A stretch of DNA of 64,000 bases from positions 124,001 through 188,000 of IMG/VR virus record IMGVR_UViG_3300037010_003311; one strand, given 5' to 3'. The notes beneath the pieces are model-generated. The model made no database searches. It saw only the letters and a program-made list of their open reading frames with translations, and was not told the DNA's origin. The translations under genes were made by a program, and so were the position numbers. Shown piece by piece: positions 8,574 through 59,868 of the stretch. How positions within the stretch are numbered: position 1 is the first letter of the stretch; each line of letters opens with the position of its first letter.

Positions 8574-8601
8574 ACTACCTCTTTAAAAAAATTTTTTTAA
8601 C

Positions 8602-8679
8602 TTTTATTTCAAAAGTTTCTAGAAATCCTATAGCTTCAAAGCTATAAAAACATGTGTAATATAGAAATATACCTCTATG
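8602..8679. repeat. Left arm of 78-bp inverted repeat flanking terminase
   Basis: Reverse complement matches 10874-10951 at 70/78 positions (manual alignment). Confidence 0.9.
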
Positions 8680-8734
8680 ATTGCAATTATCTCTAAGCAG
8701 CTATAAAAAATATTTCTAATATGATCGAAATTTT

Positions 8735-10660
8735 TTACATAATAATAAAGCTATTGAAATCGAAATCTTTGCTCGAACTTTTATTACGCTTAGCATCAAT
8801 TTTTTCAGCATGTGTTAGAGCTGAATCATCAGACTCATATATAATTTTATTTGCTCTGGATTTAACAACCAGGTTTTCATCTCTAGTTATAAGAGAGATA
8901 GATAAATAATCTTTTATATTTGCTGGGTTAAGCCCATATACTAATTGATTTTCTTCGATCTGTAAAATATTTTTCTTAATATTATATTTTCTTACCCAGA
9001 GTGTGAATCCGTAAGCTAAAACAACGTCATCATGTGAATTCTTACCTGCTTCGATTCTACCATTACGTTTATTCTCTAGGGTCCTAAGATCTTCTATTAA
9101 TAAGTCACCATGTATATATTCTGGATAAGTATTAACCATATACATAATTTCATTAAACATTTCATCCCGTTTACCACTACCTATATTTCCAGAATTGCTA
9201 GTATAGAAGCCATATACTATATCATCAGTATCACCAATGTGTTCTTTATACATATACTCGGAATAATCGAAAGCATCATATAATGGATCGGTATATAATA
9301 ATTCTTCTACTACTTCTTTACCAATACTATTTCTTTCGATAATAACTAAAAGATTCATTGGTGAAAGCTTATATTCAAGCGTTAAACCTTTAATACAACT
9401 TTTAAGTAGAGCCGCAAAACGTTTAACTACTGAAAACTTACCCTTCCATTCACCAACTTGTTGCCCAGATCTGGCATCTATTAAAACTAGAGCACTGAAA
9501 TCCGAATGTGGTCCAGCCGACATAGCGGTATCCACCCCTAGATAATATATTCCAAAAGGATCTAGTGGGGCAAATAGTTTAAATTTATTACCAAATGGTA
9601 ACACTAGTTCACTATCTGGTGTCTTAGCTATAAGTTTCATAATAACTTCATCTTCGAATAACGAAGTAGTTGAACCAAGGAAGTTAAGGTCAAGCTCTTG
9701 GTTAATTTTTCTGGTATCGAAGTTAAGTTCGCGTTTTTGTTCTTCATACCATTCTTGTGATCTAAATTCCGACCAATGTAATCTAAGACTAATGAAGTTA
9801 TTTCTTGACTTATCCCCTAACTCATCCATATAAGTTGGATATAGTTCTTTATTTTCATAATCGTATATATTATCAAAATGGGTACTGTTCTGATATATAT
9901 TATGGAAAAAGTTATCGCCGGCACCATTTGGAGTACTAGTAAATATAATACCATTTGGATAACCAAATTTTTTAGCAAAAATCTTAGCCGCAGAAATAGA
10001 TGGTTGCATAGCACCCCATACAGTTTGGGCATGTGGGATAAAAGCAGTTTCATCTATAAATACTAAGGGATTAGAAAGACCCCGACCTACCTTATCTGGA
10101 TCATTACTACCCGAAACAAAGCTAGCGGATATCTTACTACCATTCTTTAATTGTAAATAAGTTAACCTTTCCGCACTATTAGCATTTGGTACTTGTAACC
10201 AGATTGGTAAAGAATCCATCATCTCTTTCATACGGGAAATCATATCCAAAGCTCTCGTCTTATCCAGTGTTAAATAAGAAATTTGTAGTTTAGGGTAGAA
10301 TATCATACAATATAGTAAATAGAGGGCAGAAGTAGTTGTTTTACCTGATTGACGAGAACTCATATAAAGTACAGCATCATGCTGGTGAAACAGTTCTATT
10401 AATATTCTATACTTATTAGTGGAATTCCATTGTTCGGATTCCGCCATTGGAATACGTCCACCTGGTACCGGAATACTAATATAGTTTTCTATAAAATATA
10501 ATGGTGACATTTTACATTTGAACCATTCAATAGTTCTTTCATATGGGTTAAATGAATTTTTTTGTTTTTCAGTTAAGTAAGTATGTACTGGTAATGTATC
10601 AGTAGATTCTATAATTATTTCTGGATTAACGATTGAACGAATATCCTGTTTTCCAGACAT
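8735..10660 (-). CDS. terL: Terminase large subunit (T4 gp17-like)
   Basis: KCKMSPLYFIENY, Walker A SRQSGKTT, Walker B VFIDETAF, coupling motif TSTPNG, nuclease motifs LGVDTA and HDDVV. Confidence 0.95.
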   Translation of the reverse strand: MSGKQDIRSIVNPEIIIESTDTLPVHTYLTEKQKNSFNPYERTIEWFKCKMSPLYFIENYISIPVPGGRIPMAESEQWNSTNKYRILIELFHQHDAVLYMSSRQSGKTTTSALYLLYCMIFYPKLQISYLTLDKTRALDMISRMKEMMDSLPIWLQVPNANSAERLTYLQLKNGSKISASFVSGSNDPDKVGRGLSNPLVFIDETAFIPHAQTVWGAMQPSISAAKIFAKKFGYPNGIIFTSTPNGAGDNFFHNIYQNSTHFDNIYDYENKELYPTYMDELGDKSRNNFISLRLHWSEFRSQEWYEEQKRELNFDTRKINQELDLNFLGSTTSLFEDEVIMKLIAKTPDSELVLPFGNKFKLFAPLDPFGIYYLGVDTAMSAGPHSDFSALVLIDARSGQQVGEWKGKFSVVKRFAALLKSCIKGLTLEYKLSPMNLLVIIERNSIGKEVVEELLYTDPLYDAFDYSEYMYKEHIGDTDDIVYGFYTSNSGNIGSGKRDEMFNEIMYMVNTYPEYIHGDLLIEDLRTLENKRNGRIEAGKNSHDDVVLAYGFTLWVRKYNIKKNILQIEENQLVYGLNPANIKDYLSISLITRDENLVVKSRANKIIYESDDSALTHAEKIDAKRNKSSSKDFDFNSFIIM

Positions 10661-10695
10661 CTGTATTCCTTATAATTTTTAATTATTTTTATACC

Positions 10696-10702
10696 ATTTG
10701 TT
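10696..10702 (-). promoter_or_regulatory. AACAAAT candidate late-promoter motif (also 22185-22191, 26705-26711, 27619-27625, 38035-38041, 42622-42628)
   Basis: Same heptamer found 25-98 nt upstream of five virion/packaging genes and one hairpin RNA. Confidence 0.5.
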
Positions 10703-10751
10703 AAAAATATGTACTTTAGTATCGATTTTAGTTACATGCAACTAAGCTCAT

Positions 10752-10782
10752 ATGGGCTTACGAGCACCACTCGTAAGCCCAT
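10752..10782. other. 13-bp perfect hairpin upstream of terminase
   Basis: ATGGGCTTACGAG-cacca-CTCGTAAGCCCAT; no clear U tract, role unknown. Confidence 0.6.
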
Positions 10783-10873
10783 CTAAAGCAAAAATTCCAA
10801 GCACCCTCAACTAGTATAAAAAAATCAGTCGTTTATAAGTGATAAAAAATCTAACCTTAGCTATAATCCTAAA

Positions 10874-10951
10874 CATAGAGGTATATTTCTATATTACTTA
10901 TGTTTTTATAGCTTCAAAGCTATAGAATTTTTAGAACTTTTTGAAATAAAA
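10874..10951. repeat. Right arm of 78-bp inverted repeat flanking terminase
   Basis: Partner of 8602-8679; contains TATAGCTT-CA-AAGCTATA and the TATAGAAATAT motif. Confidence 0.9.
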
Positions 10952-11071
10952 ATCAAAAATTCGAAATCACCAACCGGAAATGTACTAAGTATCCGTAAAT
11001 ATCTAGTGAAAAATTTTGAAAAAATAAATTTAAACTTACTGTATTAAGTGGGCTCATCGATTGTAGTTACT

Positions 11072-11118
11072 AATATCTTTATTTGAGCGACAGGAAAAGT
11101 TACTTAGGCCATGTGGCC
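11072..11118. repeat. 47-bp direct repeat, copy downstream of endonuclease gene
   Basis: AATATCTTTATTTGAGCGACAGGAAAAGTTACTTAGGCCATGTGGCC is identical to 12744-12790. Confidence 0.95.
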
Positions 11119-11120
11119 AT

Positions 11121-12686
11121 TTAATCTAATTTATATGTAATAGACCCGGAATCATAAATTATAGCAAATTTATTATCTATTATAGTTTGAAGTTCATTAT
11201 TTGTAGATAAATTTTTTTCAAAACCAAATTTAGTTTTATGATTTTGAAATTCTGATTCGGAAAATAAAACATTACTATTATTGAGATGCCAATAAAAAGG
11301 TTCTGGTTCATTAATTGTAAATTCTTTAAAACCCAGCGTTTTATATAAATTATCGTTATCCCAACGTCTATCTATAGTAGTTTTAATTGACCCAACATAT
11401 TTTTCTCTAAAATTATTTAGTAATTTGCTAGCAGCCTCTAGTATATTATAACCAAGTTTGTTACAAAATCTTACTAATAACCATTCGTTGTCATTATCTG
11501 AGTTATTAAAAACCATTAAACTCATTAATTCTGCATCTTTATATAAACCATACGCTAGTGTACAATTGGTATAACCTTGTAAATGGTTATATTCTAGAAA
11601 AGTTTTTGCTTCTAGCTTAGATACATTCTTAATTTTTAAATCATTAGCATCAAGTTTTATACCTTTATCTAAAGTACCAGTGATTATAGATTTCCAGATA
11701 TTTTGTTTAATTGGGTTAATCCATTCTGTTTCAAATATATGTAATAGTTTTATGCCTTTGCTTTGGCAGGCATTGGTCTTTTGTAAGTGCCTAGATTGAC
11801 ATGTATATAATTGAGTCTGTTTAGTACATGATGCTCTTTTCTCAGACATATAACTGTGCCAATAAATACCATTATATTCAATTGCTAGTTTATAGTCTGG
11901 TACGTAAATATCTAATTCGTATGGTTTAATAACATCTCTTATATTTTCTTGGATTAAACTTTCTGGGATATTTATTTTAATTATATCAAGTACCTGCTTT
12001 TCAGAAATACTAATAAATGATAACCGGTTATAATCAATTTTTAATTCTTTAATTTTTTGATGTGTCCTAGCTTCCGAACAATTGAAATAAGTTTGGCATT
12101 TGATATAATCAAATCGTTTATCTTTATCAAGAAACTCTTCTATCCAGAATTCTTTATTATTCCAATTTTCAAAATTTAATAAATGACTATTTTTAAAATG
12201 CGAGCTTCCATATTTTTCTAAATTTTTATCCCTCATTTTAGATTTGGATGCTTCTAGCATATTTGGGTGCTTAACTCCATATATAAAAAGACAGGTTTCC
12301 CTACGTTTTCGAATAACTTCCGGGTTACTGGCAGCACAATTATAACCGGTCCGTTCAAAATAAGTTTCTTTTGCCTTAATTCTGGTTTCTTTTATTTTAC
12401 TTGGGTGATTAACCCCATATTTTTGCATACAAGTATTAATAGTATTGGTTTGTTTAATCCGAGCTCTGATTTCTTTAGTATTTTGCTTACAATTGAGATG
12501 CCCACATGTTAAACCATATCCCCGAGTGGTAGTAAAGAACTTTCTTATATTATTACAATCCATATTCAAGCATTTTAAATTCTCCAGATTTAAATTAAAT
12601 TTAAACTGATATTTAATAGCTTGTTTAATATCTTTAATTGTAATATCTGGAAATTGTGTTAATAATTCTTCTTCGGTAATGGTCAA
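11121..12686 (-). CDS. Free-standing homing endonuclease-like protein (Hef-like): Zn finger + KYG repeats + PD-(D/E)xK domain + NHLQG C-terminal domain
   Basis: C-x4-C...C-x4-C; ~23-aa KYG/YG repeats; ELDIYVPDYKLAIEYNGIYWHS nuclease motif; C-terminal NHLQG...RFC...YDSG domain. Confidence 0.8.
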   Translation of the reverse strand: MTITEEELLTQFPDITIKDIKQAIKYQFKFNLNLENLKCLNMDCNNIRKFFTTTRGYGLTCGHLNCKQNTKEIRARIKQTNTINTCMQKYGVNHPSKIKETRIKAKETYFERTGYNCAASNPEVIRKRRETCLFIYGVKHPNMLEASKSKMRDKNLEKYGSSHFKNSHLLNFENWNNKEFWIEEFLDKDKRFDYIKCQTYFNCSEARTHQKIKELKIDYNRLSFISISEKQVLDIIKINIPESLIQENIRDVIKPYELDIYVPDYKLAIEYNGIYWHSYMSEKRASCTKQTQLYTCQSRHLQKTNACQSKGIKLLHIFETEWINPIKQNIWKSIITGTLDKGIKLDANDLKIKNVSKLEAKTFLEYNHLQGYTNCTLAYGLYKDAELMSLMVFNNSDNDNEWLLVRFCNKLGYNILEAASKLLNNFREKYVGSIKTTIDRRWDNDNLYKTLGFKEFTINEPEPFYWHLNNSNVLFSESEFQNHKTKFGFEKNLSTNNELQTIIDNKFAIIYDSGSITYKLD

Positions 12687-12743
12687 ACTAAATTCCTATA
12701 TATTTATTACTTTAATTATATACTAAAATTCTGAATAATAATA

Positions 12744-12790
12744 AATATCTTTATTTGAGCGACAGGAAAAGTTACTTAGGCCATGTGGCC
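12744..12790. repeat. 47-bp direct repeat, copy upstream of endonuclease gene
   Basis: Identical to 11072-11118. Confidence 0.95.
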
Positions 12791-12799
12791 TAAGTAACT
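12760..12799 (-). terminator. Intrinsic terminator after tail tube gene, with CCTGTCG tail
   Basis: AGTTACTTAGGCCA/TGGCCTAAGTAACT stem followed on the minus strand by a T tract and CCTGTCG. Confidence 0.8.
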
Positions 12800-12833
12800 A
12801 TCTGTTACAATGTTCTGGTCGGGATAATTAAAA

Positions 12834-13613
12834 TTAACCAACAATACCATTTTGAACATTAGTATTTGAAACCAACTTATTGTAAATTAATTCAGTATTA
12901 TTGAATATTTTTGCACTGTTTAATATTGCTACAGCTGTAGCAACTACAGTATCGTTAGTTTCAGTTAATGGATAACCATCAAATCTATACTGCACTTGCG
13001 GACGAACAATGGAGTTATCCATAATATTACTATCATACGCGCTGTTAAGGTCAGTTAGACATTGAACACCATCATAGTATGCAACTTTAATTATATCACC
13101 TGTCGTCCATACTTGTGGGGAACCACCAACTTGACGAGCTACTGGTTTAGTTTGAATAACCATACAAGTTCCTTTATATTCAGAACTTGAAAAGTCTTTG
13201 GCAGCAATTGATGTACCAAGATATGGATCAAGGTATCCAGTCCAAGTACGGTGAACTCTCATAATTGGAGCTCCCCAATAATCTTTATATTGAATACCAA
13301 ATTCTCGAGTGATAGTTTGGCCAGCGAGGAAACTTGCTCCACCAGCTCCACCCATACCTTGTGTATCTTGTAGCATCATCTGTCTATCAGCATGAGGTGT
13401 ATAACCTTCAGCTGAAGATAATAGGTAGTTTTTAGCATTAGATCTGGTTATACCATCTTCCGTGAATAGAACATTTGGTAATCCAAAAAATACATAAAAA
13501 TAACCTTTAATAAATGGGTGGTCGGACGCAGTACGACCAGCCCCACCCGTATAACGATCAGCAGACGCTGTTGATGAATCTTTTATAGCAATTGTATTTA
13601 AAAAAGAGCTCAT
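12834..13613 (-). CDS. Tail tube protein
   Basis: 259 aa directly downstream of the sheath; tube-like pattern (W..Y.DP..G, YKG, terminal FDG). Confidence 0.72.
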   Translation of the reverse strand: MSSFLNTIAIKDSSTASADRYTGGAGRTASDHPFIKGYFYVFFGLPNVLFTEDGITRSNAKNYLLSSAEGYTPHADRQMMLQDTQGMGGAGGASFLAGQTITREFGIQYKDYWGAPIMRVHRTWTGYLDPYLGTSIAAKDFSSSEYKGTCMVIQTKPVARQVGGSPQVWTTGDIIKVAYYDGVQCLTDLNSAYDSNIMDNSIVRPQVQYRFDGYPLTETNDTVVATAVAILNSAKIFNNTELIYNKLVSNTNVQNGIVG

Positions 13614-13632: not shown

Positions 13633-15966
13633 TTATATAACGATAATTGGAATATCGATTACTTCGATAGTGCCAATAGGATTAACAGTAATACTCAAGC
13701 GGAGTGTGTATGTTGACTCGTTATAAACTGCATTAATATTTACAGAACTAAAAATACCATCTTTAAAGTTTTCATTAGAAACTTTATATTTCGACATGTA
13801 CTTATCCACACGTTCAACAGCAACATCAACTACATTAGAAGTCTCTTTACGTTGGACTAAATCTTTCAATAATTTAGGAAGATCTTTTCTTATACGGTGA
13901 ATAACTTTAACCACAGAACCTCTACTTAATTTGGAAGCTTTTTTATAAGCGGTTAATTGATCTATGAAATAAGTACCTTCTGGTTCAACTATGATAGTAT
14001 TAATTTGCATATTTCTTAATTTTGCAATTTGTGATGCACCTGGTTCATAAGCTAGGTTCTGACGAGTAGCATTCAGTAAACCACCTTTAGCGATATTAGC
14101 AACTGGTTCAGTTATACTATAATCTCTATCAGTTTTCAAGTGAGCCATTAAAGCATAATAAGAGGTTGGCATACGTAGACGCTGACCGTTAGTTAAACTG
14201 ATATGCTCTTTGTTAACTTGTGAACTATAAATCATAGTGTTATAAGAACTTAGGCTAAGTACCGAGTTTCTGATATCATAATCAGATTGTACAGCAGTTT
14301 CGTTGCTAGTGTTTGTACCAATATTATAGTTTACTGGTGGAACACTTACTAGTGGCATTGTTATACCAATACTATCACCAAATAATGTAATAGCATTAAT
14401 GACGTCAACATTGTTAGACCAATCTGGAACATAATCAAAATCATATTTTGGATACATTACTTCACGAATCTCTTTTGTATTATTAAAGAAATCAACTAGG
14501 ATATCTCTAGCTTTACAGGTTTGAGCCATTGATGGTAAATATAAGTATCCAGCGCTATTAAATAATGGATTAGTAGCTGTAGCACTATCGTCTTGTCCAC
14601 TCTCCATTTTAATATTGTGGTTTAGTAAATAGTTATAAATATACCAGCGTAAGAAACCAACTTGGTTATAAACTAGTTTACCCTCAGTATTTATAGTTAC
14701 TTGATAGTAAGAGTTATCACCATCAAAATATTTTATAGATGGAATATCTGTTGTAGCTGGATTAGCTATTAAATTATAACCAAGAGTCACTTTCGTTGCC
14801 GGAACTGAATTAGCATCACTCACACCACCAACTGGAACCCATACTAATTCTGCATAACGAATAGTACCAGTATTATCAACGAATGAAATGTATTGGATAT
14901 AATCTTTTGTATCATAATAAAAATTATCTGATTTAACTTGACGTGATATACTATATACTGTAGCTAATGAACCATCAGCTTGAGCAACAATATCACTCGT
15001 TCCAAATATTTCATATTTTTTACCAGCATCAATAAGTATTAAGCGGTTTGCTTGCCCCATTTCTGAATTCAATTGATCAATAGTTGCATATTTTCTTAAT
15101 TCATCACGGATCGTGCTTGAATTTAGATTAACGTCTGCATCGATATCAATTGCCATACTAATGAAATCATTTTTTAGTTTAGAGATTTGATTAACAAAAA
15201 GCTCTTCACCATTATACATATCCACTATTATTTTACCAGTTTTGTTATCTTGATCAATTAATGAAAAAGTAAACGAGTCACTCATAGATTTAACAGTACC
15301 ATTAGAATTTTCAAAAATTCCAGTTTTAATATAGTTAAATTTATAGTTAGTTTCACCATCGCGGTTACTATCTAGTTTTTCATAATCAGTAGCATTACTA
15401 AAAGTCATGAAAAGGTCATTGTACCCGATACCAGGTGCTTGAGCCAAGATACTAAATGCAATTCTACTATTATTAGGGTTTGGTATTGTTTTAGTATGAT
15501 CATGTGGATCAGTAATATAATCAGCACTTAAAGAATCAATAACTGAAACGTATTCATCTTTACTATTAATCTCTTCAAATGTTGAAACTTTAATAACTTT
15601 ACTATTACTATTATTATCTAATGCTTCATCTGCTAACTGATCGTACTTAGATGGTGCATATTTAGTTTTATCAATAGATATACAGTAGTTTGCATACGTA
15701 GCATCTGGTGATTTTAAACAGTAAGTTAAAACTTTATTAGTGAATTGGAATGCATCGTTTGCATACTCTAATCCAAGTCCATAACGATTAACATCAATCG
15801 CACCGTGTTTGTATTTTAGTTCAGATGGAGTTGTACACCAATTAAAACCTTTTCCGTACTTAGCGAATAAAGGTATAAACGGGACTCTACCACCAGCTAC
15901 AGATACTTCAGTAGTCGGTTGATCAATTACCGACGTTGTAATACCTGGTATTATATCATTTGCCAT
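13633..15966 (-). CDS. Tail sheath protein
   Basis: N-terminal IPGITTSVIDQ; C-terminal EPVANIAKG, QINTII, DQLT..K.SKLSR, VNPIGTIEVIDI, typical of contractile sheaths. Confidence 0.87.
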   Translation of the reverse strand: MANDIIPGITTSVIDQPTTEVSVAGGRVPFIPLFAKYGKGFNWCTTPSELKYKHGAIDVNRYGLGLEYANDAFQFTNKVLTYCLKSPDATYANYCISIDKTKYAPSKYDQLADEALDNNSNSKVIKVSTFEEINSKDEYVSVIDSLSADYITDPHDHTKTIPNPNNSRIAFSILAQAPGIGYNDLFMTFSNATDYEKLDSNRDGETNYKFNYIKTGIFENSNGTVKSMSDSFTFSLIDQDNKTGKIIVDMYNGEELFVNQISKLKNDFISMAIDIDADVNLNSSTIRDELRKYATIDQLNSEMGQANRLILIDAGKKYEIFGTSDIVAQADGSLATVYSISRQVKSDNFYYDTKDYIQYISFVDNTGTIRYAELVWVPVGGVSDANSVPATKVTLGYNLIANPATTDIPSIKYFDGDNSYYQVTINTEGKLVYNQVGFLRWYIYNYLLNHNIKMESGQDDSATATNPLFNSAGYLYLPSMAQTCKARDILVDFFNNTKEIREVMYPKYDFDYVPDWSNNVDVINAITLFGDSIGITMPLVSVPPVNYNIGTNTSNETAVQSDYDIRNSVLSLSSYNTMIYSSQVNKEHISLTNGQRLRMPTSYYALMAHLKTDRDYSITEPVANIAKGGLLNATRQNLAYEPGASQIAKLRNMQINTIIVEPEGTYFIDQLTAYKKASKLSRGSVVKVIHRIRKDLPKLLKDLVQRKETSNVVDVAVERVDKYMSKYKVSNENFKDGIFSSVNINAVYNESTYTLRLSITVNPIGTIEVIDIPIIVI

Positions 15967-22158: not shown

Positions 22159-22245
22159 AAATCACCATCCATATAAAATTACCAATTTGTTTTTGTATAG
22201 AAATTTGGTACAGTTTGGTCTCTGCCATTACTTCGATCGCAGATG

Positions 22246-22270
22246 AAAGATTTTTTTAACGACATGAAAA
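22246..22270. repeat. 25-bp direct repeat downstream of endonuclease pair
   Basis: AAAGATTTTTTTAACGACATGAAAA, 24/25 identical to 24903-24927. Confidence 0.85.
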
Positions 22271-22293: not shown

Positions 22294-23601
22294 TTAATCT
22301 ATTTTAAAAACAAAATTACCGGAATCAAAAATAGCTTTATAACCATTAAGGTCTATAACTAGTTCTTTTTCAGTTAAATTTTCTTTATATACTTCAAGCT
22401 TTGTTTCAAGCTTATGTTTTTGGAAACTCTGTCGACTATGAAGTTTTGGTAAATTGTAATTATCAGTAATGTCTTCTCGCCAATAAAAATAATTTGGCTC
22501 AGCAACCTTTTCTTCATGGAATCCAATCTGTCTATATAAGTTTCCTTCTGACCAACGCCTATTTGCATATGATTTAATACTACCTGTATATTTAGCTTTG
22601 AATGCTTTGAGTAACCTGCTTGCACCACCTACTACACTATAACCTTTTGCATTACAAAACCGCATAAGCTCCCAATCTGTATTCTTATCAAATCGGCTTT
22701 TACTAAATGTCATAATAGATACTAATTCTTTTTGGTAGAATAAAGCAAATCGAATAAGTGCTTTACCAGTTCCTTGCAAGTGGTTACTTTCAACGAACTG
22801 ATTGCTTATTTTTAATAAACCTTTATGAGCCCGGTTGCTAGAATCAATCTCTATAATATCACATTTCCGAGCATAAATTCTATTAGATAAACCAAGAGCA
22901 TTTATTATCATGCTTTTCCAAATAAGTTGTTTGTTAGGATGTAGCCATTCTATATCATACATATATAGTACTTTTATACCAGTTTCAAGGCCACGATTAG
23001 TTGTATTCAAAAAATTATTTTTTTTGGATTTAAGATTACTTCTGGCTTCGATAATTGATTCGGCATTTGGAGTGATTGGGGTAAGCTTAGTAGCTAATTC
23101 TTTACTAATAAGGCTATCATTCAATAACTCGACTATTACTATCGAAACTTGTTGGTCTGGGAAATATATATCATTATCTAAAATATTAGCCTTATCACCA
23201 GCTAATACATAGTTAAATGATCTAGCCTCCAGCCACTGTACAATACTAGCAATAATAGTTTTTTTATTATTATATGTAGCCTCAGCTGGTAGAATATTTG
23301 GGATGGTTGGTACCTCTGGTTCCACAGCTTGAGTTATATGTTTCTTTTTAGATATAGTATTTACAATTTTAGTGATTTTCATATCTTTAATAGTACTAGC
23401 CATTTTAGCTTGGCAAGAATCACTACAGCAATATTTAAAACCAGCATCCGAATTTTTCCAAGCTTTTAAATTACCGCAATCCGGATTAATGCATTCTAAA
23501 TTATCTAAAGTTAATTGGAACTTATCCTTGTATTTTAGAATTCGTTTTATATTGAATTTATCTATGTTTGGATAATACTCTTTAAGTGTCGCTTCCGTCA
23601 T
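22294..23601 (-). CDS. Hef-like endonuclease paralog with degenerate nuclease motif
   Basis: Likely start ATG 23601 (AAGGGA RBS, 1 nt after the upstream stop). Shared N-terminal Zn-finger domain, no KYG repeats, DNDIYFPDQQVSIVIVELL in place of the nuclease motif, complete NHLQG domain. Confidence 0.75.
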   Translation of the reverse strand: MTEATLKEYYPNIDKFNIKRILKYKDKFQLTLDNLECINPDCGNLKAWKNSDAGFKYCCSDSCQAKMASTIKDMKITKIVNTISKKKHITQAVEPEVPTIPNILPAEATYNNKKTIIASIVQWLEARSFNYVLAGDKANILDNDIYFPDQQVSIVIVELLNDSLISKELATKLTPITPNAESIIEARSNLKSKKNNFLNTTNRGLETGIKVLYMYDIEWLHPNKQLIWKSMIINALGLSNRIYARKCDIIEIDSSNRAHKGLLKISNQFVESNHLQGTGKALIRFALFYQKELVSIMTFSKSRFDKNTDWELMRFCNAKGYSVVGGASRLLKAFKAKYTGSIKSYANRRWSEGNLYRQIGFHEEKVAEPNYFYWREDITDNYNLPKLHSRQSFQKHKLETKLEVYKENLTEKELVIDLNGYKAIFDSGNFVFKID

Positions 23602-23602
23602 T

Positions 23603-24790
23603 TTATCCCTTTTTAATTTTGAGTTCGTGTGGGTCATCTGTTCGCAGCTGTAATTGTCCAGAATCATATACCTGGAATTGAGTAGATTCAGTTTTAATTT
23701 TTGGCTCAATTATTAAATATTCTTCTAGGTTTATAGATTCTAGATAGCACCCATCGTCCAAAACATATGAAAAAGCCACTTCCGTAGCCCTTGGTTCTAA
23801 TTTAAATTTTATTGCATTCTGGATTTTAGAAATATTTTTTTCATAAGTATCTGTTTCATAAAGGTGTACTAAGCTAATACCAGCAGCAATACAAGCTAAT
23901 GATTTCTGCTGATGGTAGTACTTATCTGTACCAGCTTCAGTACTATGCCAATATAAACCATTATATTCCACGGCAAGTTTTAATGCCGGAATATAAATAT
24001 CCAACTCTAGTGGTTTAATTATGCTACGGTTGTTAGTATTGACCTCGTAGCCTAGTTCTTGTATGTAGCTAGCAAGCTGCTGCTCTTTTAAGCTGGAACC
24101 TTTAAACTTTTTATATTGTATGTTTAATCGCTTAGCTCTTTGCCATAAATGACCAGAGGTACAATTAAAGTGGTTCATACATTTTTCAATATTTAAATAA
24201 CCATCAACCATTAAAAAGTTTTCTGCCCAATATTTAGCATCATCCCAATGTACAAAGTTAGTAATATGCTTATTTAGATGGTTTTTACCAGCACCATATT
24301 TATTAGAGTTTGTATCTTTTGCTTTCAATATTGCTTCTGGATTCGAGGTAGTATGTTCATAACCAGTTCTAGTTAAATAAGTTTGTTTAGCTTTTAATCT
24401 GGTTTCTTTAATTTTACTAGGATGTTCAACTCCATAATTTTTAAGAGATGTTAATTTCTTCTTCTCTTTAATTAATGGGCTACAGCTATTGTATTCAAAT
24501 CCAAATCGTTTGAGGTTAGTAGCTTTTTGTTTAGAAAACATTATTTCTAAAATTTTGGGCTTAGAAACATTTTTACAAATGTCGCTACCACAAGTATGAC
24601 CGAATCCTTGCGTAGAATTTTGCCACTTCCGTAACAAACCGCAACTAGGATTAATACATTTAATATTGGCTACAGTATATTGGAACTTAGTTTGGTATTT
24701 GATGGATCGTTTCAAATCTATTAGCTTGGCATCAGGGAATTGGGCTCGTAACATTTCTAGGGTTAATGACATTGTTACAGAATCTGACAT
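23603..24790 (-). CDS. Homing endonuclease-like protein (Zn finger + KYG repeats + PD-(D/E)xK), short C-terminus
   Basis: ELDIYIPALKLAVEYNGLYWHS; lacks the NHLQG domain. Confidence 0.8.
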   Translation of the reverse strand: MSDSVTMSLTLEMLRAQFPDAKLIDLKRSIKYQTKFQYTVANIKCINPSCGLLRKWQNSTQGFGHTCGSDICKNVSKPKILEIMFSKQKATNLKRFGFEYNSCSPLIKEKKKLTSLKNYGVEHPSKIKETRLKAKQTYLTRTGYEHTTSNPEAILKAKDTNSNKYGAGKNHLNKHITNFVHWDDAKYWAENFLMVDGYLNIEKCMNHFNCTSGHLWQRAKRLNIQYKKFKGSSLKEQQLASYIQELGYEVNTNNRSIIKPLELDIYIPALKLAVEYNGLYWHSTEAGTDKYYHQQKSLACIAAGISLVHLYETDTYEKNISKIQNAIKFKLEPRATEVAFSYVLDDGCYLESINLEEYLIIEPKIKTESTQFQVYDSGQLQLRTDDPHELKIKKG

Positions 24791-24827
24791 ATATTTCCTT
24801 ACTAGAATATTGTTACAATCTACCTTT

Positions 24828-24838
24828 ATATTTCTATA
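24828..24838 (-). promoter_or_regulatory. TATAGAAATAT promoter-like motif (also 10883-10893, 41238-41248, 42263-42273, 44084-44094, 57027-57037, 63553-63563; plus-strand copy 8660-8670)
   Basis: Conserved 11-mer overlapping a TAnnAT -10-like hexamer, mostly 27-43 nt upstream of start codons. Confidence 0.65.
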
Positions 24839-24902
24839 CTAATTAAAATAGTACTGGGACTATAAACTGTAACAATATCCCTGTCGTAGGTGTTGCTAAA
24901 TA

Positions 24903-24927
24903 AAAGATTTTTTTAACGACAGGAAAA
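24903..24927. repeat. 25-bp direct repeat upstream of endonuclease pair
   Basis: AAAGATTTTTTTAACGACAGGAAAA. Confidence 0.85.
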
Positions 24928-24953
24928 TTTTAGAGGCTTACGCCTCTAAAATT
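24917..24953 (-). terminator. Intrinsic terminator after major capsid gene
   Basis: AATTTTAGAGGC-GTAA-GCCTCTAAAATT stem with GNRA loop, then TTCCTGTCG. Confidence 0.8.
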
Positions 24954-26607
24954 ATTGTTGCATTGTAGCAGAACCAGTATCTAGTGTTGATACAGCGTTA
25001 TTATCTGGTGTAGATAATTCACCGAAGTAAGTAACTCCAGATGTTTGACCTAGTGAATCATAGTTGAATCCTGAGATTCCAGTAATTTTGATTGTAGCAA
25101 TACCTTCAGAACGAACAATACCAATCCAGTTTCTTGATTTGATGAAAGTACGGTTGATAGAGTTTGTAACCTCGCGAATTACATAGAATGGTTTATGAGA
25201 CACTTCCAAAATTGTACTTTGGCTTAATGTTTCAGATTTTGTTACAAGGTGGATTAAATCATCAGCTACCGCAAATGATGAAATGATTTGTAACTTAGCG
25301 AAATCACCAGTTGTACCATTTTGACCCATTTCTCCAACAGCACCAGAAAATTTCATTGTAAATTCTTGAAGAGATTTCAATAATGCAGCTGCTTTAATTC
25401 CACAGATAACATAAGAGAATTCTAAACGAGTGTTTTTACGTACAATTTCTTGTAGCATTGTAATTACTGGTAAAATGTTTTTGAAGATATCAGCAAATGA
25501 TCTAGGGTTAGTACCGAAGTCAGCTTTGATTTTTGAAAAATCGACTTCTGCATAGTGACCAAATTTTTTAGCTGATGGAATGTTTGTTTCCAAAAGTTCA
25601 GCAATTTCATAATCTTTGTTCAATTTCATTTGATCTTTTACATAATCTTTTACTTGAGCAATGATATCTAGATTGTAAAGTGATTTCCAATCTTGGATGA
25701 TTTCTTCAATGTTTTCGATTTCGAAAGAATCTTCAACGTCTGCATTGATATCGATCATTGATTGTTCTGGTCTTGCTTTAACAACACCTTTACCATTACC
25801 AACACCAAAGATACGTGTACGGAAAGTAATTGAACCAGTTGTAACTGTTCCAAGGAAAGAGATATTTACTATACCATAAGTAACTTGACCATTATCAAAG
25901 TTTACTGAACCAGAAACACGGATAACACCAAGAGAACCACCATTAGCATCAGTTAAAGTAATATCTTCATCAAAATTACCACGAGCATCAGCAATAATGA
26001 TAACAGCCATATCATGTTGAGTATCTGTAGTACCATCATTAGTTGTGAAAGTGATGTTAGTTATTTTGAAATTTCTTTTATTGATACGGAATTGATCAAC
26101 ATTAGTTGTAATACCAGCCAAAGTGAAAAGATTTGAAACAGCTTTATAAGAAACTAGTGTAACATAACCAGGACGAACGATTTGGTTAGCATTTGGGAAG
26201 TAAACTTTAGTTTCAGCGCCATCAAGACCAATAATTTTAGCAGTCCATTTAAGACGTGGAATAGACATTATTGGTTTATCAGATGGATAAACTGTAACAG
26301 CTTGGCTTAATAGAGGCTCTGCATAAATATCAAGTAGCATAGGGAAAGATGTTACTGAATAAGAGATCGCTTCAGGTGATCCCAACATTGTTGTACCCTC
26401 TTCGATAATCATTTGACGTTGACGATCAAAAAGTGATTGGAAGAATGGTTTTTGACTCTCTTCAAAACCTTCTAAAAGCTTTTGAGTATAAGACTCATAA
26501 TACATATCATCAGTAATTACTGATGTTGATGTTAATGCATCATCAAAAATAACAGAGTTATCAGCAACGAATGCACCAAAGTTTTCTAAAATTAGACCTT
26601 CTTGCAT
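24952..26607 (-). CDS. Major capsid protein (distant T4 gp23 / HK97 fold)
   Basis: 551 aa immediately downstream of the prohead protease; strongly biased codons; IEEIIQDWKSLYNLD matches the gp23 E..QDL.A..G.D motif; followed by a strong terminator. Confidence 0.87.
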   Translation of the reverse strand: MQEGLILENFGAFVADNSVIFDDALTSTSVITDDMYYESYTQKLLEGFEESQKPFFQSLFDRQRQMIIEEGTTMLGSPEAISYSVTSFPMLLDIYAEPLLSQAVTVYPSDKPIMSIPRLKWTAKIIGLDGAETKVYFPNANQIVRPGYVTLVSYKAVSNLFTLAGITTNVDQFRINKRNFKITNITFTTNDGTTDTQHDMAVIIIADARGNFDEDITLTDANGGSLGVIRVSGSVNFDNGQVTYGIVNISFLGTVTTGSITFRTRIFGVGNGKGVVKARPEQSMIDINADVEDSFEIENIEEIIQDWKSLYNLDIIAQVKDYVKDQMKLNKDYEIAELLETNIPSAKKFGHYAEVDFSKIKADFGTNPRSFADIFKNILPVITMLQEIVRKNTRLEFSYVICGIKAAALLKSLQEFTMKFSGAVGEMGQNGTTGDFAKLQIISSFAVADDLIHLVTKSETLSQSTILEVSHKPFYVIREVTNSINRTFIKSRNWIGIVRSEGIATIKITGISGFNYDSLGQTSGVTYFGELSTPDNNAVSTLDTGSATMQQ

Positions 26608-57916: not shown

Positions 57917-58562
57917 AACCAGCTTTTGATATCCAATCTTTTTTAAATCTATTATAAATCTCAGTTGATTCTTCCAATGTATCAGCGTCACGAATCTCAT
58001 TTTTTAGTTTACAATAATTATCGTATGCGGCAAACGCTCTAGATATTTCATCCTTATTCATTAGATACTTTTCTAGAAGATCAATAAGTTCATCATTTTC
58101 TTTTTCTAATATTTCAATATACTTTTCTTCTTTATTTGCATCAGTAATAAAATAACCTTGTTCCATAAGACTATTATTTAGTACTATAAATTCATAATAG
58201 GTAAGATTTGCAACTGTATTAATTTTTTGATCAAAGAATCTTTCTGCTTCAAGTAATATGTTTTGCTTCGCTTGTTCAAGCAATACATCAACGTGTATCT
58301 CTGGTAAAGAATCTTTTACAACTATATCATATGGCTCGAGTTTTGTTAAACCTCTAAATTCGGTTATCAATACCGCTTTATCAAGTTTTAGGTATTTGTC
58401 TACTTTTGTAGCACTTGCTTTAGTTAATGGTGCAATCCTATACCCAATATCATAATCCTTAAGTTTACTACTAGTTTGATCAATGATTTCGATTATTTGA
58501 TATAGGCCAATCTGTATTTTTTTACATAATGCAAATTTTGCTGCATTTTGATTTTTTTCCAT
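57903..58562 (-). CDS. Hypothetical protein in radical SAM operon
   Basis: Likely start ATG 58562 (AAGGA RBS); helical, acidic C-terminal half. Confidence 0.7.
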   Translation of the reverse strand: MEKNQNAAKFALCKKIQIGLYQIIEIIDQTSSKLKDYDIGYRIAPLTKASATKVDKYLKLDKAVLITEFRGLTKLEPYDIVVKDSLPEIHVDVLLEQAKQNILLEAERFFDQKINTVANLTYYEFIVLNNSLMEQGYFITDANKEEKYIEILEKENDELIDLLEKYLMNKDEISRAFAAYDNYCKLKNEIRDADTLEESTEIYNRFKKDWISKAGYVSI

Positions 58563-59868
58563 TCGAATTTTCCTTAATTTTAATTTTACCAGCGTTCCAT
58601 AAGGCGCGGGTTTTGTGCACCATCCGGCTTTCTGGTTCAAGTATTTTATAATCTACACCAAGTGGATAGCAACCAGAATCCAAGTCATATATATCTATCA
58701 CAGTGTCTGGATCATAAGCTATAAATTTATCTATTTGCTCTTTCCAATTGCTTAAGTTTATATCTTCATATAACTGAAGCAACCGAATACCGGCCTCTAA
58801 GCAGGCTAAAGCTTTTCGTTGGTGTCGGTACTTACAAAAATCGTAATCTAGTTGTTGTGAGCTGATCCCTATGGTTTCGTGGTAGCTATGCCAATAACTA
58901 CCATTCCATTCTATTGCCAATTTTAAGCTAGGTATCCAAATGTCTAGCTCCTGATTTGGTATTATGGTCCGTTCATTTGCTACCGCTGGAACACCTAAGC
59001 TTTCTAAATATGGTATTATAGCTTGTTCCTGTAAACTAGTTGCTGCGGTCTTGGTATATTTTATACCAAGTTTTTTAATTTGGGTATGGGTAGCTGGTTG
59101 TTCACAATTAAAATAATCCATACATGTTATATAATCAAAATAATTATCGTTTGTTATAAAATTTCTTTTCCAGAATTCGATATCGTTCCAATATTTAGCA
59201 TTAGTATAATGTTTACGTTTTGGATTACTTACCCCATATTTTTCGATATTATTTTTAATCATCTTTTCTTTAATATCTTTATTTTGTAAAGGTTTTGATA
59301 CACCATACTTAATTAAACTTGATTCCTGTTGTTTACGTTTAATTTCTGAATTAGAATTTGGACTTTTGGTACCATATTTTTCGATATTATTTTTAATCAT
59401 CTTTTCTTTAATTGCCGGATGTTGCATAGAAGTTGTATAACCATATATTTGTAAACAAGCTTCTTGTTGCTTACGCTTAATTTCCGGGACCGAATTCGGG
59501 CTGCTGGTACCATATTTTTTAATACTGTTTTGAACCATTTTTTCTTTAACCACTAAACTTTGAATAGGGTTTTCGACACCAAATCTATCTAAACTAGTTT
59601 GTTTATATTTTATTTTTCTTAATCTAATTATTTCCGGCCTCATTATATTATAGCATTCGGTTGAACAACAATATTTGAGCCCAGATTTTGTAGTACCTTT
59701 CGATTTCAAATTTTTACAATCCTGATTTAAACACTTTATATTTTCTAAAGTTAACTCAAATTTTAATTGATATTTTACTATAAAATTTAATTGTCGGATT
59801 GTTAAATTTTTTGCTTCTGGATACGCATCTTTAATTAATTCTGGGGTTAATTTATGTTTCTGTAACAA
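58522..59868 (-). CDS. Homing endonuclease-like protein (Zn finger + six KYG-type repeats + PD-(D/E)xK)
   Basis: ELDIWIPSLKLAIEWNGSYWHS; exact 41-bp internal duplication at 59234-59274 and 59372-59412. Confidence 0.8.
   Translation of the reverse strand: MLQKHKLTPELIKDAYPEAKNLTIRQLNFIVKYQLKFELTLENIKCLNQDCKNLKSKGTTKSGLKYCCSTECYNIMRPEIIRLRKIKYKQTSLDRFGVENPIQSLVVKEKMVQNSIKKYGTSSPNSVPEIKRKQQEACLQIYGYTTSMQHPAIKEKMIKNNIEKYGTKSPNSNSEIKRKQQESSLIKYGVSKPLQNKDIKEKMIKNNIEKYGVSNPKRKHYTNAKYWNDIEFWKRNFITNDNYFDYITCMDYFNCEQPATHTQIKKLGIKYTKTAATSLQEQAIIPYLESLGVPAVANERTIIPNQELDIWIPSLKLAIEWNGSYWHSYHETIGISSQQLDYDFCKYRHQRKALACLEAGIRLLQLYEDINLSNWKEQIDKFIAYDPDTVIDIYDLDSGCYPLGVDYKILEPESRMVHKTRALWNAGKIKIKENSNGKKSKCSKICIM

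What the first reader, a model, noticed from the sequence alone, without database searches (positions are those of the whole stretch)
11072..12799. Endonuclease gene bracketed by a perfect 47-bp duplication of the tail-tube terminator's 3' part
Seen: 11072-11118 equals 12744-12790. The upstream copy belongs to an intact terminator. The downstream copy starts 2 nt after the endonuclease stop and has lost most of its 5' stem arm. Known: homing of free-standing endonucleases is gene conversion and normally leaves no target duplication. Inference: a recent insertion by a duplication-generating or circle-integration route aimed at the terminator tail; the gene could also loop out by recombination between the repeats.
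Basis: partly seen in the sequence, partly recalled or inferred. Interest (0 to 1): 0.7.

Follow-up and report, generated by a model that had tools for sequence, protein, structure and literature searches.

The report
Homing endonuclease insertion duplicating a terminator
A selfish nuclease gene in an uncultured giant phage sits just after the tail-tube gene's transcription stop signal between two identical 47-base copies of part of that signal; related strains lack the gene and have one copy, and other copies of the gene show the same layout, so this looks like a repeatable way for such genes to enter new sites.

Summary
Window 11072-11118 equals 12744-12790 (47/47; none expected by chance). 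In public runs the 47-mer has about twice the depth of its flanks. Genes run on the minus strand: tail tube, an intact 13-bp hairpin, a 521-aa Hef/EDxHD-type homing endonuclease gene (HEG), a copy lacking the outer 5' arm, a spacer, then terminase.

The repeat is not random DNA. It is the 3' part of a signal found about 17 times in this genome and across the phage clade: a hairpin followed directly by TTCCTGTCG and an A-rich tail.

The layout recurs. A second paralog is bracketed by 49 nt (one mismatch) and a tandem pair by 28 nt (26/28). Five independent Hef loci in unrelated viral contigs also show it; ten cultured-phage loci do not.

Empty sites exist. A ~97% identical strain lacks the second HEG and skips exactly one repeat period. 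An ~85% relative has one hairpin and no HEG at this locus.

Best reading: a recent HEG insertion between a terminator and the next promoter that re-copied the terminator's 3' part, probably through illegitimate or one-sided break repair or template switching. The repeats now allow precise loss or gain. The duplication route itself is unresolved.

The parts
12834..13613 (-). Tail tube-like gene (259 aa), downstream of the sheath gene 13633-15966(-)
   Evidence: ORF list. phrog_21257 virion structural protein and phrog_23 sheath for the neighbour. 45-61% identical relatives always follow a sheath gene.
12770..12799 (-). Intact terminator-like hairpin of the tube gene (13 bp stem, 4-nt loop)
   Evidence: Terminator scan. 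RNA fold -26.4 kcal/mol, z = -6.5.
12744..12790 (-). Upstream copy of the 47-nt repeat: 5 nt of the 5' arm, the loop, the 3' arm, the T-run with the TTCCTGTCGC box, and a 15-nt A-rich tail
12760..12768 (-). Conserved box TTCCTGTCG directly after the hairpin (upstream copy)
   Evidence: 6 matches in the window against 0.13 expected. 15 in the genome, all co-oriented with genes and preceded by a hairpin. Hairpin plus TTC(C/T)TGT follows the tube stop codon in 15 of 26 loci of distant relatives.
12687..12743 (-). 57-nt HEG leader (unique sequence; AGGA ribosome-binding site 7 nt before a TTG start)
   Evidence: Sequence. The N-terminus aligns with paralogs that start with ATG.
11121..12686 (-). 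Free-standing Hef/EDxHD-type homing endonuclease gene, 521 aa: N-terminal DUF7487 helical repeats, central Vsr-like nuclease (about 225-335), C-terminal GNAT/Mom-like domain (about 340-521)
   Evidence: phrog_3339 E = 2.5e-87. DUF7487. Profile of 29 homologs hits I-Bth0305I, PDB 3R3P, E = 2e-6. AF2 model pLDDT 86.8. Foldseek hits to GNAT folds and phage Mu Mom. Seven paralogs in the genome.
11072..11118 (-). Downstream copy of the 47-nt repeat. It starts 2 nt after the HEG stop codon, lacks the outer 5' stem arm and forms no stable hairpin.
11088..11096 (-). Conserved box TTCCTGTCG (downstream copy)
10661..11071 (-). Non-coding spacer before the terminase gene. It holds the promoter-like word TATAGAAATA (10884-10893) and one arm of a 104-nt inverted repeat (10856-10959).
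   Evidence: No ORF of 40 aa or more. No tRNA or Rfam match. Motif census. Inverted repeat. Conserved at about 85% in the HEG-less relative.
8735..10660 (-). Terminase large subunit gene (641 aa), the next gene after the insertion
   Evidence: Terminase_6N and phrog_2
24900..24927 (-). Second case inside the window: upstream copy of a 28-nt repeat (box plus tail), directly after the hairpin that ends the major head protein gene 24952-26607(-)
22294..24838 (-). Two tandem Hef-like HEGs (23603-24790 and 22294-23709) between the two 28-nt copies
22243..22270 (-). Downstream copy of the 28-nt repeat (26/28). It is preceded by a different hairpin that starts right after the HEG stop codon, and its box is mutated to TTCATGTCG.

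Best explanation
This is a free-standing homing endonuclease gene of the Hef/EDxHD (Vsr-like nuclease) family. It has invaded the short spacer between the tail-tube gene's terminator-type signal (hairpin, TTCCTGTCGC box, A-rich tail) and the promoter region of the terminase gene. The insert is a 57-nt leader plus the ORF, with no 3' UTR. The invasion was not the canonical two-sided gene conversion. The 47 nt from just inside the hairpin's 5' arm to 15 nt past the box ended up on both sides of the insert.

The most likely way (inferred): the nuclease, or a replication problem at the hairpin, produced a break or nick at or near the signal. Repair then used one-sided or illegitimate double-strand-break repair, or a template switch of the MMBIR type. 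The invading end copied the signal, then the HEG up to its stop codon, and rejoined the recipient upstream of where it had left. This re-copied the 3' part of the signal.

Consequences seen in the sequence: the tube gene keeps an intact terminator; the HEG lies behind it; the region after the HEG keeps its original 47 nt of upstream context. After that first event, the HEG can spread among strains by ordinary homing through the flanking homology. It can be lost or regained precisely by homologous recombination between the two copies.

Shown: the insertion, the duplication, the empty alleles, the recurrence and the family assignment. Inferred: the break-repair route, the timing and where the enzyme cuts.
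For: The 47/47 repeat is real and has double depth.

HEG identity.

HEG-less alleles with one copy: at this locus in an ~85% identical relative (X3 joint 11109->12788 with TTTAA between, which gives one 12-bp hairpin). At the paralogous locus in a ~97% identical strain (X4 contig of 1010 nt; joint L004 1420->2875 skips 1454 nt, the repeat period).

None of 30 tube loci of more distant relatives has an HEG after the tube gene; 15 of the 26 whose tube stop could be read have a single hairpin plus box.

Recurrence in this genome: 47/47, 48/49 and 26/28 brackets at 3 of 5 HEG loci. About 3 of 238 other non-paralog-array genes have a bracket (Fisher p = 8e-5; p = 0.008 if tandem paralog arrays are counted).

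The geometry repeats. The right edge lies 13-16 nt after the box. The downstream copy always lacks the outer 5' arm or the whole hairpin. The HEG stop codon lies 0-2 nt from the downstream copy or, at the tandem pair, from its hairpin.

The same layout occurs at 5 independent Hef loci in unrelated IMG/VR contigs. In two of them the repeat starts with the stop codon itself.

Established knowledge: T4-type phages can acquire introns and HEGs by illegitimate one-sided break repair with microhomology junctions (review PMC2988022, citing Parker et al. 1999). The EDxHD prototype I-Bth0305I is a homodimer that footprints about 60 bp, prefers a pseudopalindrome and often only nicks (PMC3239194). A homing endonuclease can drive microhomology-bounded segmental duplication (SegB, PMC13096335).
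Against: No donor sequence was found, so junction microhomologies cannot be examined. No cleavage data exist. Every sequence window shorter than 47 nt of the empty allele survives in the HEG-bearing allele. If the enzyme cuts here, self-immunity would need a target longer than the repeat. Otherwise the enzyme cuts elsewhere, and the link between nuclease and duplication is then indirect. Perfect identity may reflect gene conversion rather than recency. Ten Hef loci in cultured phages and 11 of 12 in related clade genomes show no bracket. So duplication is not an obligatory part of Hef mobility, or it decays fast. Empty alleles cannot be polarised as ancestral or looped-out.
Confidence: 0.5

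Rival explanations
1. Cassette exchange of the PeSL type. The HEG plus one copy of the 47-mer exists, at least transiently, as a small circle. The circle is made by recombination between the two copies. It integrates by homologous recombination into the single copy of a HEG-less genome, so gain and loss are both simple crossovers in the repeat.
For: The product of a single crossover between a circle and a 47-nt homology is exactly the observed structure. The empty allele at the paralogous locus differs by exactly one repeat period. In T4-type phages, ORFs flanked by composite terminator/promoter cassettes form mini-circles and are gained and lost at these cassettes, and less than 50 bp of homology suffices (PMC2839356, PMC4122927). 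The unitig graph (repeat at 39.2; HEG at 20.5; flank at 22.2) cannot exclude a circle.
Against: It explains spread and loss but not origin. The two copies are locus-specific: other cassettes in the genome share only the ~10-nt box. A circle therefore had to carry this locus's own 47-mer already. True PeSL exchange between different cassettes predicts chimeric cassettes, not 47/47 identity. No sigma-70-type promoter lies in the repeat.
Confidence: 0.2
2. The endonuclease itself makes the duplication. It binds the hairpin plus box and nicks the two strands at positions 28-50 nt apart. One nick is in or before the hairpin and the other about 14 nt after the box. Fill-in after insertion then yields a long target-site duplication, as with a transposon.
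For: The right edge sits at a nearly fixed distance (13-16 nt) from the conserved box at three loci. The left edge falls in the 5' arm at two of them. Relatives of the enzyme footprint about 60 bp, act as dimers and frequently nick one strand only (PMC3239194). Both copies in the HEG-bearing allele are incomplete relative to a ~60-bp site, which would give self-immunity.
Against: The duplication length is not fixed: 28, 47 and 49 nt here, and 31-53 nt elsewhere. There are no terminal repeats and no transposase or integrase domain. No homing endonuclease is known to work this way. Most Hef loci have no bracket.
Confidence: 0.15
3. The HEG arrived with a terminator of its own. The identity of the two copies is secondary, produced by gene conversion between two neighbouring cassettes that already shared the box.
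For: At the tandem-HEG locus the downstream copy has a different hairpin and shares only the box plus tail (26/28). This looks like a partly homogenised or partly diverged pair.
Against: Conversion needs homology on both sides of the tract, and only about 10 nt are shared between unrelated cassettes. The downstream copies at the two best cases are truncated versions of the local hairpin, not independent terminators. The empty allele equals exactly one period.
Confidence: 0.1
4. Assembly artefact or chance repeat.
For: The source is a metagenomic contig. Short-read unitigs cannot span 47 nt at k=31.
Against: No such repeat appears in shuffles. The repeat unitig has double depth. The same HEG-bearing sequence is found in three samples from different studies. 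The same architecture occurs at two other loci of the genome and in unrelated contigs.
Confidence: 0.03

Closest known systems
Hef (phage U5) and Hef-like free-standing homing endonucleases; EDxHD family prototype I-Bth0305I (PDB 3R3P)
   Same: Protein family and nuclease fold. Free-standing gene between conserved essential or structural genes: here tube/terminase and head protein; in cultured phages nrdA/nrdB, gp23/gp24, gp18/gp19 and a split DNA polymerase. Present or absent among close relatives.
   Different: Canonical homing leaves no target duplication, and none was found at 10 cultured-phage Hef loci. Here 28-49 nt of the target flank the gene at 3 of 5 loci.
PeSL mobile regulatory cassettes of T4-type phages (Arbiol et al. 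2010, PMC2839356; Comeau et al. 2014, PMC4122927)
   Same: Short composite stem-loop signals dispersed between genes. ORFs are flanked by two of them. Indels between close relatives occur exactly at the cassettes. The neighbours stay transcriptionally insulated. Loop-out and re-integration are possible.
   Different: PeSLs are one family of similar sequences with a sigma-70 early promoter, and exchanges give chimeric cassettes. Here the flanking copies are a local duplication (47/47), while other cassettes share only the box. No sigma-70 promoter lies in the repeat. The cargo is a homing endonuclease. The phage clade is different.
Illegitimate ('one-sided') double-strand-break repair in phage T4 intron homing (Parker, Belisle and Belfort 1999, as summarised in PMC2988022)
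   Same: A known route by which mobile endonuclease-bearing DNA enters sites that lack homology on one side, with junctions at microhomology. It can re-copy recipient sequence.
   Different: It was shown for a plasmid and phage td intron system. It is not known as a recurrent natural signature at terminators. The original paper could not be read here.
Integrative elements that target the 3' end of tRNA genes
   Same: The geometry matches: an intact target upstream and a partial 3' copy of the target downstream of the insert, so target function is preserved. The boundary lies at a stem-loop.
   Different: No integrase or recombinase is present. The repeat length is variable. The target is a terminator-type signal, not a tRNA gene.
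SegB-driven segmental amplification in phage T6 (PMC13096335)
   Same: A homing endonuclease's breaks lead to duplications bounded by microhomology next to its own gene.
   Different: There the HEG plus a tRNA gene is amplified in tandem under selection. Here a short non-coding signal is duplicated around a single HEG.

Membership tests
Hef-like / EDxHD (Vsr-like) homing endonucleases | Sequence membership in the family | tested here: met
   phrog_3339 'homing endonuclease' E = 2.5e-87 over residues 30-520. blastn and tblastn hits to genes annotated as Hef-like in Campylobacter, Proteus, Yersinia, Acinetobacter and other phages. A profile of 29 homologs hits I-Bth0305I (3R3P) at E = 2e-6.
Hef-like / EDxHD (Vsr-like) homing endonucleases | Conserved catalytic residues of the Vsr-like nuclease core | tested here: inconclusive
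   D259 is invariant. E257, E270, the block Y271-H277, H300 and K303 are at least 90% conserved among 29 homologs. There is a weak Vsr match at residues 258-293. A residue-by-residue mapping onto the EDxHD catalytic set was not made.
Hef-like / EDxHD (Vsr-like) homing endonucleases | Free-standing gene that is present or absent among closely related genomes at the same site | tested here: met
   Empty sites in runs X3 and X4. No HEG after the tube gene in 30 relatives.
Hef-like / EDxHD (Vsr-like) homing endonucleases | Site-specific cleavage of the HEG-less allele and unidirectional gene conversion | not testable with these tools
   Needs enzyme assays and phage crosses. The homodimer prediction gave no answer.
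PeSL-type mobile regulatory cassettes | Dispersed composite element made of a terminator stem-loop and a promoter | tested here: inconclusive
   About 17 hairpin-plus-TTCCTGT(C/G) elements, all co-oriented with genes. No sigma-70-like promoter lies in the repeat. The promoter-like word TATAGAAATA lies outside the repeat, further downstream. Function is untested.
PeSL-type mobile regulatory cassettes | Flanking cassettes are different family members and exchange yields chimeric cassettes | tested here: not met
   The flanking copies are 47/47 and 48/49 identical local duplicates. Different loci share only about 10 nt.
PeSL-type mobile regulatory cassettes | Mini-circles formed by recombination between flanking cassettes | not testable with these tools
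   Only k=31 contigs of the runs were available. Their graph fits both a circle and an integrated copy.
DNA transposon / insertion sequence | Transposase, terminal inverted repeats and a target-site duplication of fixed length | tested here: not met
   The only ORF is the HEG. No terminal inverted repeats were reported at the insert ends. Duplication lengths are 28, 47 and 49 nt.
Integrase-mediated site-specific insertion (tRNA-gene type) | Tyrosine or serine recombinase encoded by the element | tested here: not met
   The interval from sheath to tape measure contains only the tube gene, the HEG and the terminase gene.

The most novel reading that the evidence does not exclude
Hef/EDxHD homing endonucleases may have a second mode of mobility besides gene conversion. 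In this mode they colonise new intergenic sites by a terminator-directed, duplication-generating insertion. The palindromic hairpin plus the conserved box would be recognised by the dimeric, nick-prone enzyme. Cuts or a stalled fork at the two ends of the signal's 3' part would give a 28-53-nt target-site duplication. This duplication would both preserve the neighbours' regulation and make the invaded allele immune, because each copy is an incomplete ~60-bp site.
Probability: 0.2. Interest if true: 0.85.

Novelty: new variant of a known kind. Interest (0 to 1): 0.6.

Why it matters
How free-standing homing endonuclease genes reach new sites ('transposition' as opposed to homing) is an open question. 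The literature I could search offers only illegitimate break repair as a possibility (PMC2988022). Here the scar of such events is still readable. The boundaries are precise, the matching empty alleles are available, and the same geometry occurs at three loci of one genome and at several unrelated phage loci.

This makes the question testable. One can synthesise the single-copy site, add the enzyme and map the cuts.

It also defines a new clade-wide signal (hairpin plus TTCCTGTCG) in a group of uncultured jumbo phages. And it shows that terminators can act as safe landing pads whose partial duplication insulates the neighbouring structural and packaging genes.

If it is only rare illegitimate repair filtered by selection, it is a neat but ordinary example of phage mosaicism.

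Tried and rejected
1. Close DNA relatives. Megablast against 50,697 phage records found nothing. blastn found only short hits inside other Hef genes. Exact-pattern scans of IMG/VR and of JGI metagenome contigs, for the repeat and for the inferred empty-site hairpin, found nothing.

2. Tube-protein relatives (30 loci) are only 40-61% identical and are not syntenic downstream of the tube gene. They could not serve as empty sites, but they revealed the conserved hairpin plus box.

3. I first took a near-identical pair at genome 224563/225042 as a third insertion. It is a tandem array of paralogous small genes, each with its own terminator, so I dropped it.

4. I first thought the 49-nt repeat supplied the ribosome-binding site of the gene after the second HEG. 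The ATG there opens only a 12-codon frame, and the real gene starts 86 nt further on behind a TATAGAAATA word. I withdrew that idea. The second HEG itself does start 2 nt after the repeat and can use the repeat's AAGGA.

5. RNAfold paired the box with sequence 5' of the hairpin at two loci. Other elements do not share this, so I rejected it as a general feature.

6. There is no tRNA and no Rfam family in 10500-13000.

7. phmmer of the single protein against the PDB found nothing. The homodimer prediction gave no answer.

8. Ten Hef loci of cultured phages, and 11 of 12 Hef loci in four related large contigs, have no bracket.

9. Two key papers could not be opened: Parker et al. 1999 and Sandegren et al. 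2005.
Full report
1. The observation

Window 11072-11118 and 12744-12790 are identical over 47 nt. With up to three mismatches allowed there are exactly two matches and none in 100 dinucleotide-preserving shuffles. The whole virus record holds only these two copies. That record is 226,657 bp, GC 32%, estimated 81% complete; the window is its bases 124001-188000.

All genes in this region are on the minus strand. Read in the direction of transcription, the order is:
- sheath gene 13633-15966;
- tube-like gene 12834-13613;
- an intact hairpin 12799-12770 (13 pairs, 4-nt loop), followed directly by TTTCCTGTCG;
- a 57-nt leader;
- a 521-aa ORF 12686-11121;
- two bases, then the second copy of the 47-mer;
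- 411 nt without an ORF of 40 codons or more;
- the terminase large subunit gene 10660-8735.

The upstream copy holds the last 5 nt of the 5' arm, the loop, the 3' arm, the box and a 15-nt A-rich tail. The downstream copy has the same 47 nt, but the outer 5' arm is replaced by the end of the ORF. As RNA, the intact signal folds at -26.4 kcal/mol (z = -6.5). The truncated one folds at -8.8 kcal/mol (z = -0.2).

2. Is the duplication real?

Four public runs from microbial mats and sediments hold the region. In run X1 the 47-mer is a separate k=31 unitig at depth 39.2. The unitig carrying the ORF (11089-12773) has depth 20.5 and the tube flank 22.2. Two copies per genome would give exactly this. 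The same HEG-bearing sequence occurs with no mismatches in X1, X2 and X3. One caveat remains: unitigs at k=31 cannot link across 47 nt, so physical linkage rests on the source contig.

3. What the gene is

The ORF matches PHROG 3339 'homing endonuclease' at E = 2.5e-87 and carries DUF7487. DNA and protein searches hit genes annotated as Hef-like homing endonucleases in phages of Campylobacter, Proteus, Yersinia, Acinetobacter, Klebsiella, Dickeya and others.

A profile of 29 homologs hits the catalytic domain of I-Bth0305I (PDB 3R3P) at E = 2e-6. I-Bth0305I is the prototype of the EDxHD (Vsr-like) family, to which its authors assigned the Hef type (PMC3239194).

The AlphaFold model (pLDDT 86.8) shows three parts: N-terminal helical repeats, a central alpha/beta nuclease domain, and a C-terminal domain from about residue 340 to 521. 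That last domain matches GNAT folds in Foldseek, with phage Mu Mom as the best hit.

The genome holds seven paralogous ORFs at five loci.

4. What was duplicated

The 47-mer is part of a recurrent signal. TTCCTGTCG occurs six times in the window against 0.13 expected and 15 times in the genome. With the variants TTCCTGTCA and TTCCTGTGG there are about 17 elements. In each, a 9-16-bp hairpin is followed directly by the box and an A-rich stretch, and all are co-oriented with the genes.

In distant relatives (tube protein 40-61% identical), the tube stop codon is followed by a hairpin plus TTC(C/T)TGT in 15 of 26 loci. One of these stands before a convergent gene. So this is a clade-wide terminator-type signal. 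Whether the box acts in termination, processing or initiation is not known.

A different word, TATAGAAATA, is the better promoter candidate. It occurs 31 times against about 9 expected. It mostly lies 30-60 nt before a ribosome-binding site and start codon. It stands back to back where the two transcription directions diverge. It lies outside the repeats, further downstream. The insertions therefore sit between a terminator-type signal and the next promoter.

5. The pattern recurs

- A second paralog (genome 120525-121928; L004 1438-2841, minus strand; 50% identical to the first) is bracketed by a 49-nt repeat with one mismatch. Again the upstream copy belongs to an intact 12-bp hairpin. The downstream copy keeps only 7 bp of stem. 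The HEG stop codon overlaps the start of the downstream copy. The HEG's ATG lies 2 nt after the upstream copy, behind its AAGGA.
- Two tandem HEGs just after the major head protein gene (window 22294-24838) are bracketed by 28 nt of box plus tail, 26/28 identical. Here the downstream copy follows a different hairpin that begins right after the stop codon.
- At all three loci the right edge of the repeat lies 13-16 nt after the box.
- The other two HEG loci have no bracket.
- Among the other genes of the genome, flank repeats are nearly all explained by tandem paralog arrays. About three unique genes have one. This gives Fisher p = 8e-5, or p = 0.008 if the arrays are counted.
- Outside this genome, 5 independent loci among 68 testable Hef loci in IMG/VR show the same layout. 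The repeats are 31-53 nt. In two of the five the repeat begins with the stop codon itself, and two carry the TTC(C/T)TG box.
- Ten loci in cultured phages and 11 of 12 in four related large contigs show none.

The signature is therefore recurrent but found at a minority of loci. That is what one expects if only recent events remain readable, or if only some insertions use this route.

6. Empty sites

- This locus. Run X3 contains a 282-nt contig (depth 2.9, about 85% identical). It joins window 11109 to 12788 with TTTAA between. The result is the tube gene's end, one intact 12-bp hairpin with a different loop, the box and tail, and then the spacer. There is no HEG.
- The second locus. Run X4 contains a 1010-nt contig (depth 5.7; 23 mismatches over 899 aligned nt). 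It joins L004 1420 to 2875 and skips 1454 nt, which is exactly the repeat period. The joint lies inside the repeat. HEG-bearing fragments occur in the same sample at lower depth, so both alleles coexist.
They cannot be polarised, because the ancestral state and a loop-out product look the same. However, no relative has an HEG after the tube gene, and the downstream copies are truncated. Together these make the HEG-bearing state the derived one.

7. How it most likely works

Canonical homing copies the HEG between two homologous flanks and leaves no duplication (established knowledge; PMC2988022). The structure here needs two non-homologous junctions. Their positions in the target overlap by 28-49 nt.

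I favour one-sided or illegitimate break repair, or a template switch. An end from the recipient copies the signal and then the HEG up to its stop codon. In these cassettes the stop codon is always followed at once by a hairpin, which is a plausible stalling point. The end then rejoins the recipient inside or before the hairpin. T4-type phages are known to do such repair, and a homing endonuclease has been shown to drive microhomology-bounded duplications (PMC2988022, PMC13096335).

Afterwards, ordinary homing or a crossover in the repeat (as for PeSL cassettes; PMC2839356) can spread or remove the gene.

A more novel alternative is that the dimeric, nick-prone enzyme itself cuts at both ends of the duplicated segment. 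Its relatives footprint about 60 bp (PMC3239194). Three things speak for this: the fixed distance of the right edge from the box, the hairpin-anchored left edge, and the fact that both copies are incomplete relative to a ~60-bp site. Two things speak against it: the variable repeat length and the many loci without a bracket.

One firm point constrains both models. Every window of the empty allele shorter than 47 nt survives in the HEG-bearing allele. Insertion alone therefore cannot protect a short target at this site.

8. Comparison with what is known, and verdict

By family the gene is an ordinary Hef/EDxHD homing endonuclease. The arrangement works like a PeSL-type cassette or like a tRNA-gene integration that restores its target. 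It is not a member of either group:
- the flanking copies are local duplicates, not different members of a cassette family;
- there is no sigma-70 promoter in the repeat;
- no recombinase is present.

In the papers I could search I found no description of long target duplications as a recurrent signature of free-standing homing endonucleases. That library is incomplete.

I rate this as a new variant of a known kind. The observation and its extension are solid. The mechanism is open but directly testable.

Noticed in passing
window 8594-8697 and 10856-10959: The terminase large subunit gene is bracketed by a 104-nt inverted repeat (85% complementary). Each arm contains the promoter-like word TATAGAAATA, so the distal arm would point antisense into the gene's 3' end. 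Alternatively, the two arms could pair in the mRNA. The position of the terminase gene between the tube and tape-measure genes is also unusual and is not seen in 30 relatives.
   Followed up: partly
whole genome; window 10884-10893, 24829-24838 and others; genome 90183-90232: TATAGAAATA occurs 31 times against about 9 expected. It mostly lies 30-60 nt upstream of a ribosome-binding site and start codon on the coding strand. It stands back to back at the point where transcription diverges. It is probably the phage's own promoter word, reminiscent of the T4 late TATAAATA. The same inverted pair (TATTTCTATAGTAAC ... GTTACTATAGAAA) follows the tube terminator in several relatives.
   Followed up: partly
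window 11121-12140 (protein residues about 340-521): The C-terminal third of the Hef-like protein is a GNAT fold whose best solved match is the DNA-modifying Mom protein of phage Mu. Some Acinetobacter phage records call the homolog 'nuclease/acetyltransferase'. Its role in a homing endonuclease (DNA binding, base flipping or modification) is unknown.
   Followed up: partly
window 22294-24838: Two Hef-like genes stand in tandem directly after the major head protein gene's terminator. The first (395 aa) lacks the C-terminal part. The second starts 1 nt after the first one's stop codon.
   Followed up: partly
window 58522-59868; genome 55844-57418 and 85891-87039: Three further Hef paralogs have no flanking repeat. 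They are packed tightly against their neighbours, with stop and start codons a few bases apart. One follows a tail-fibre-like gene and lies near a radical SAM gene. Whether any of them splits a host gene was not checked.
   Followed up: no
window 13100-13123 (tube gene); L004 1089-1098: In the divergent strain (about 95-98% identical) that dominates run X4, substitutions cluster in short patches about 310-330 nt from the two HEG insertion sites. There are nine changes in 24 nt in the tube gene, including a compensating +1/-1 pair. These may be target-site or immunity polymorphisms, or edges of conversion tracts.
   Followed up: no
L071 476-506 / 2374-2404; L105 1083-1137 / 2761-2813; genome 201590 / 201947: In several bracketing pairs, the two hairpin copies have identical stems but reverse-complemented loops. 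This suggests strand switching across the hairpin or small loop inversions.
   Followed up: no
genome 33-42 kb, 61-64 kb and 224-226 kb (outside the window): There are large tandem arrays of paralogous small genes. Some are rich in repeats of the ATGGTAATGC type, and each unit has its own hairpin-plus-box signal. These arrays account for most flank repeats in the genome.
   Followed up: partly
window 10673 / 12900 (runs X2 and X3): Low-depth contigs join 12900 back to 10673 with 28 other letters between. This is most likely a short chance match from another organism or a relative with a different gene order. It is unexplained.
   Followed up: no
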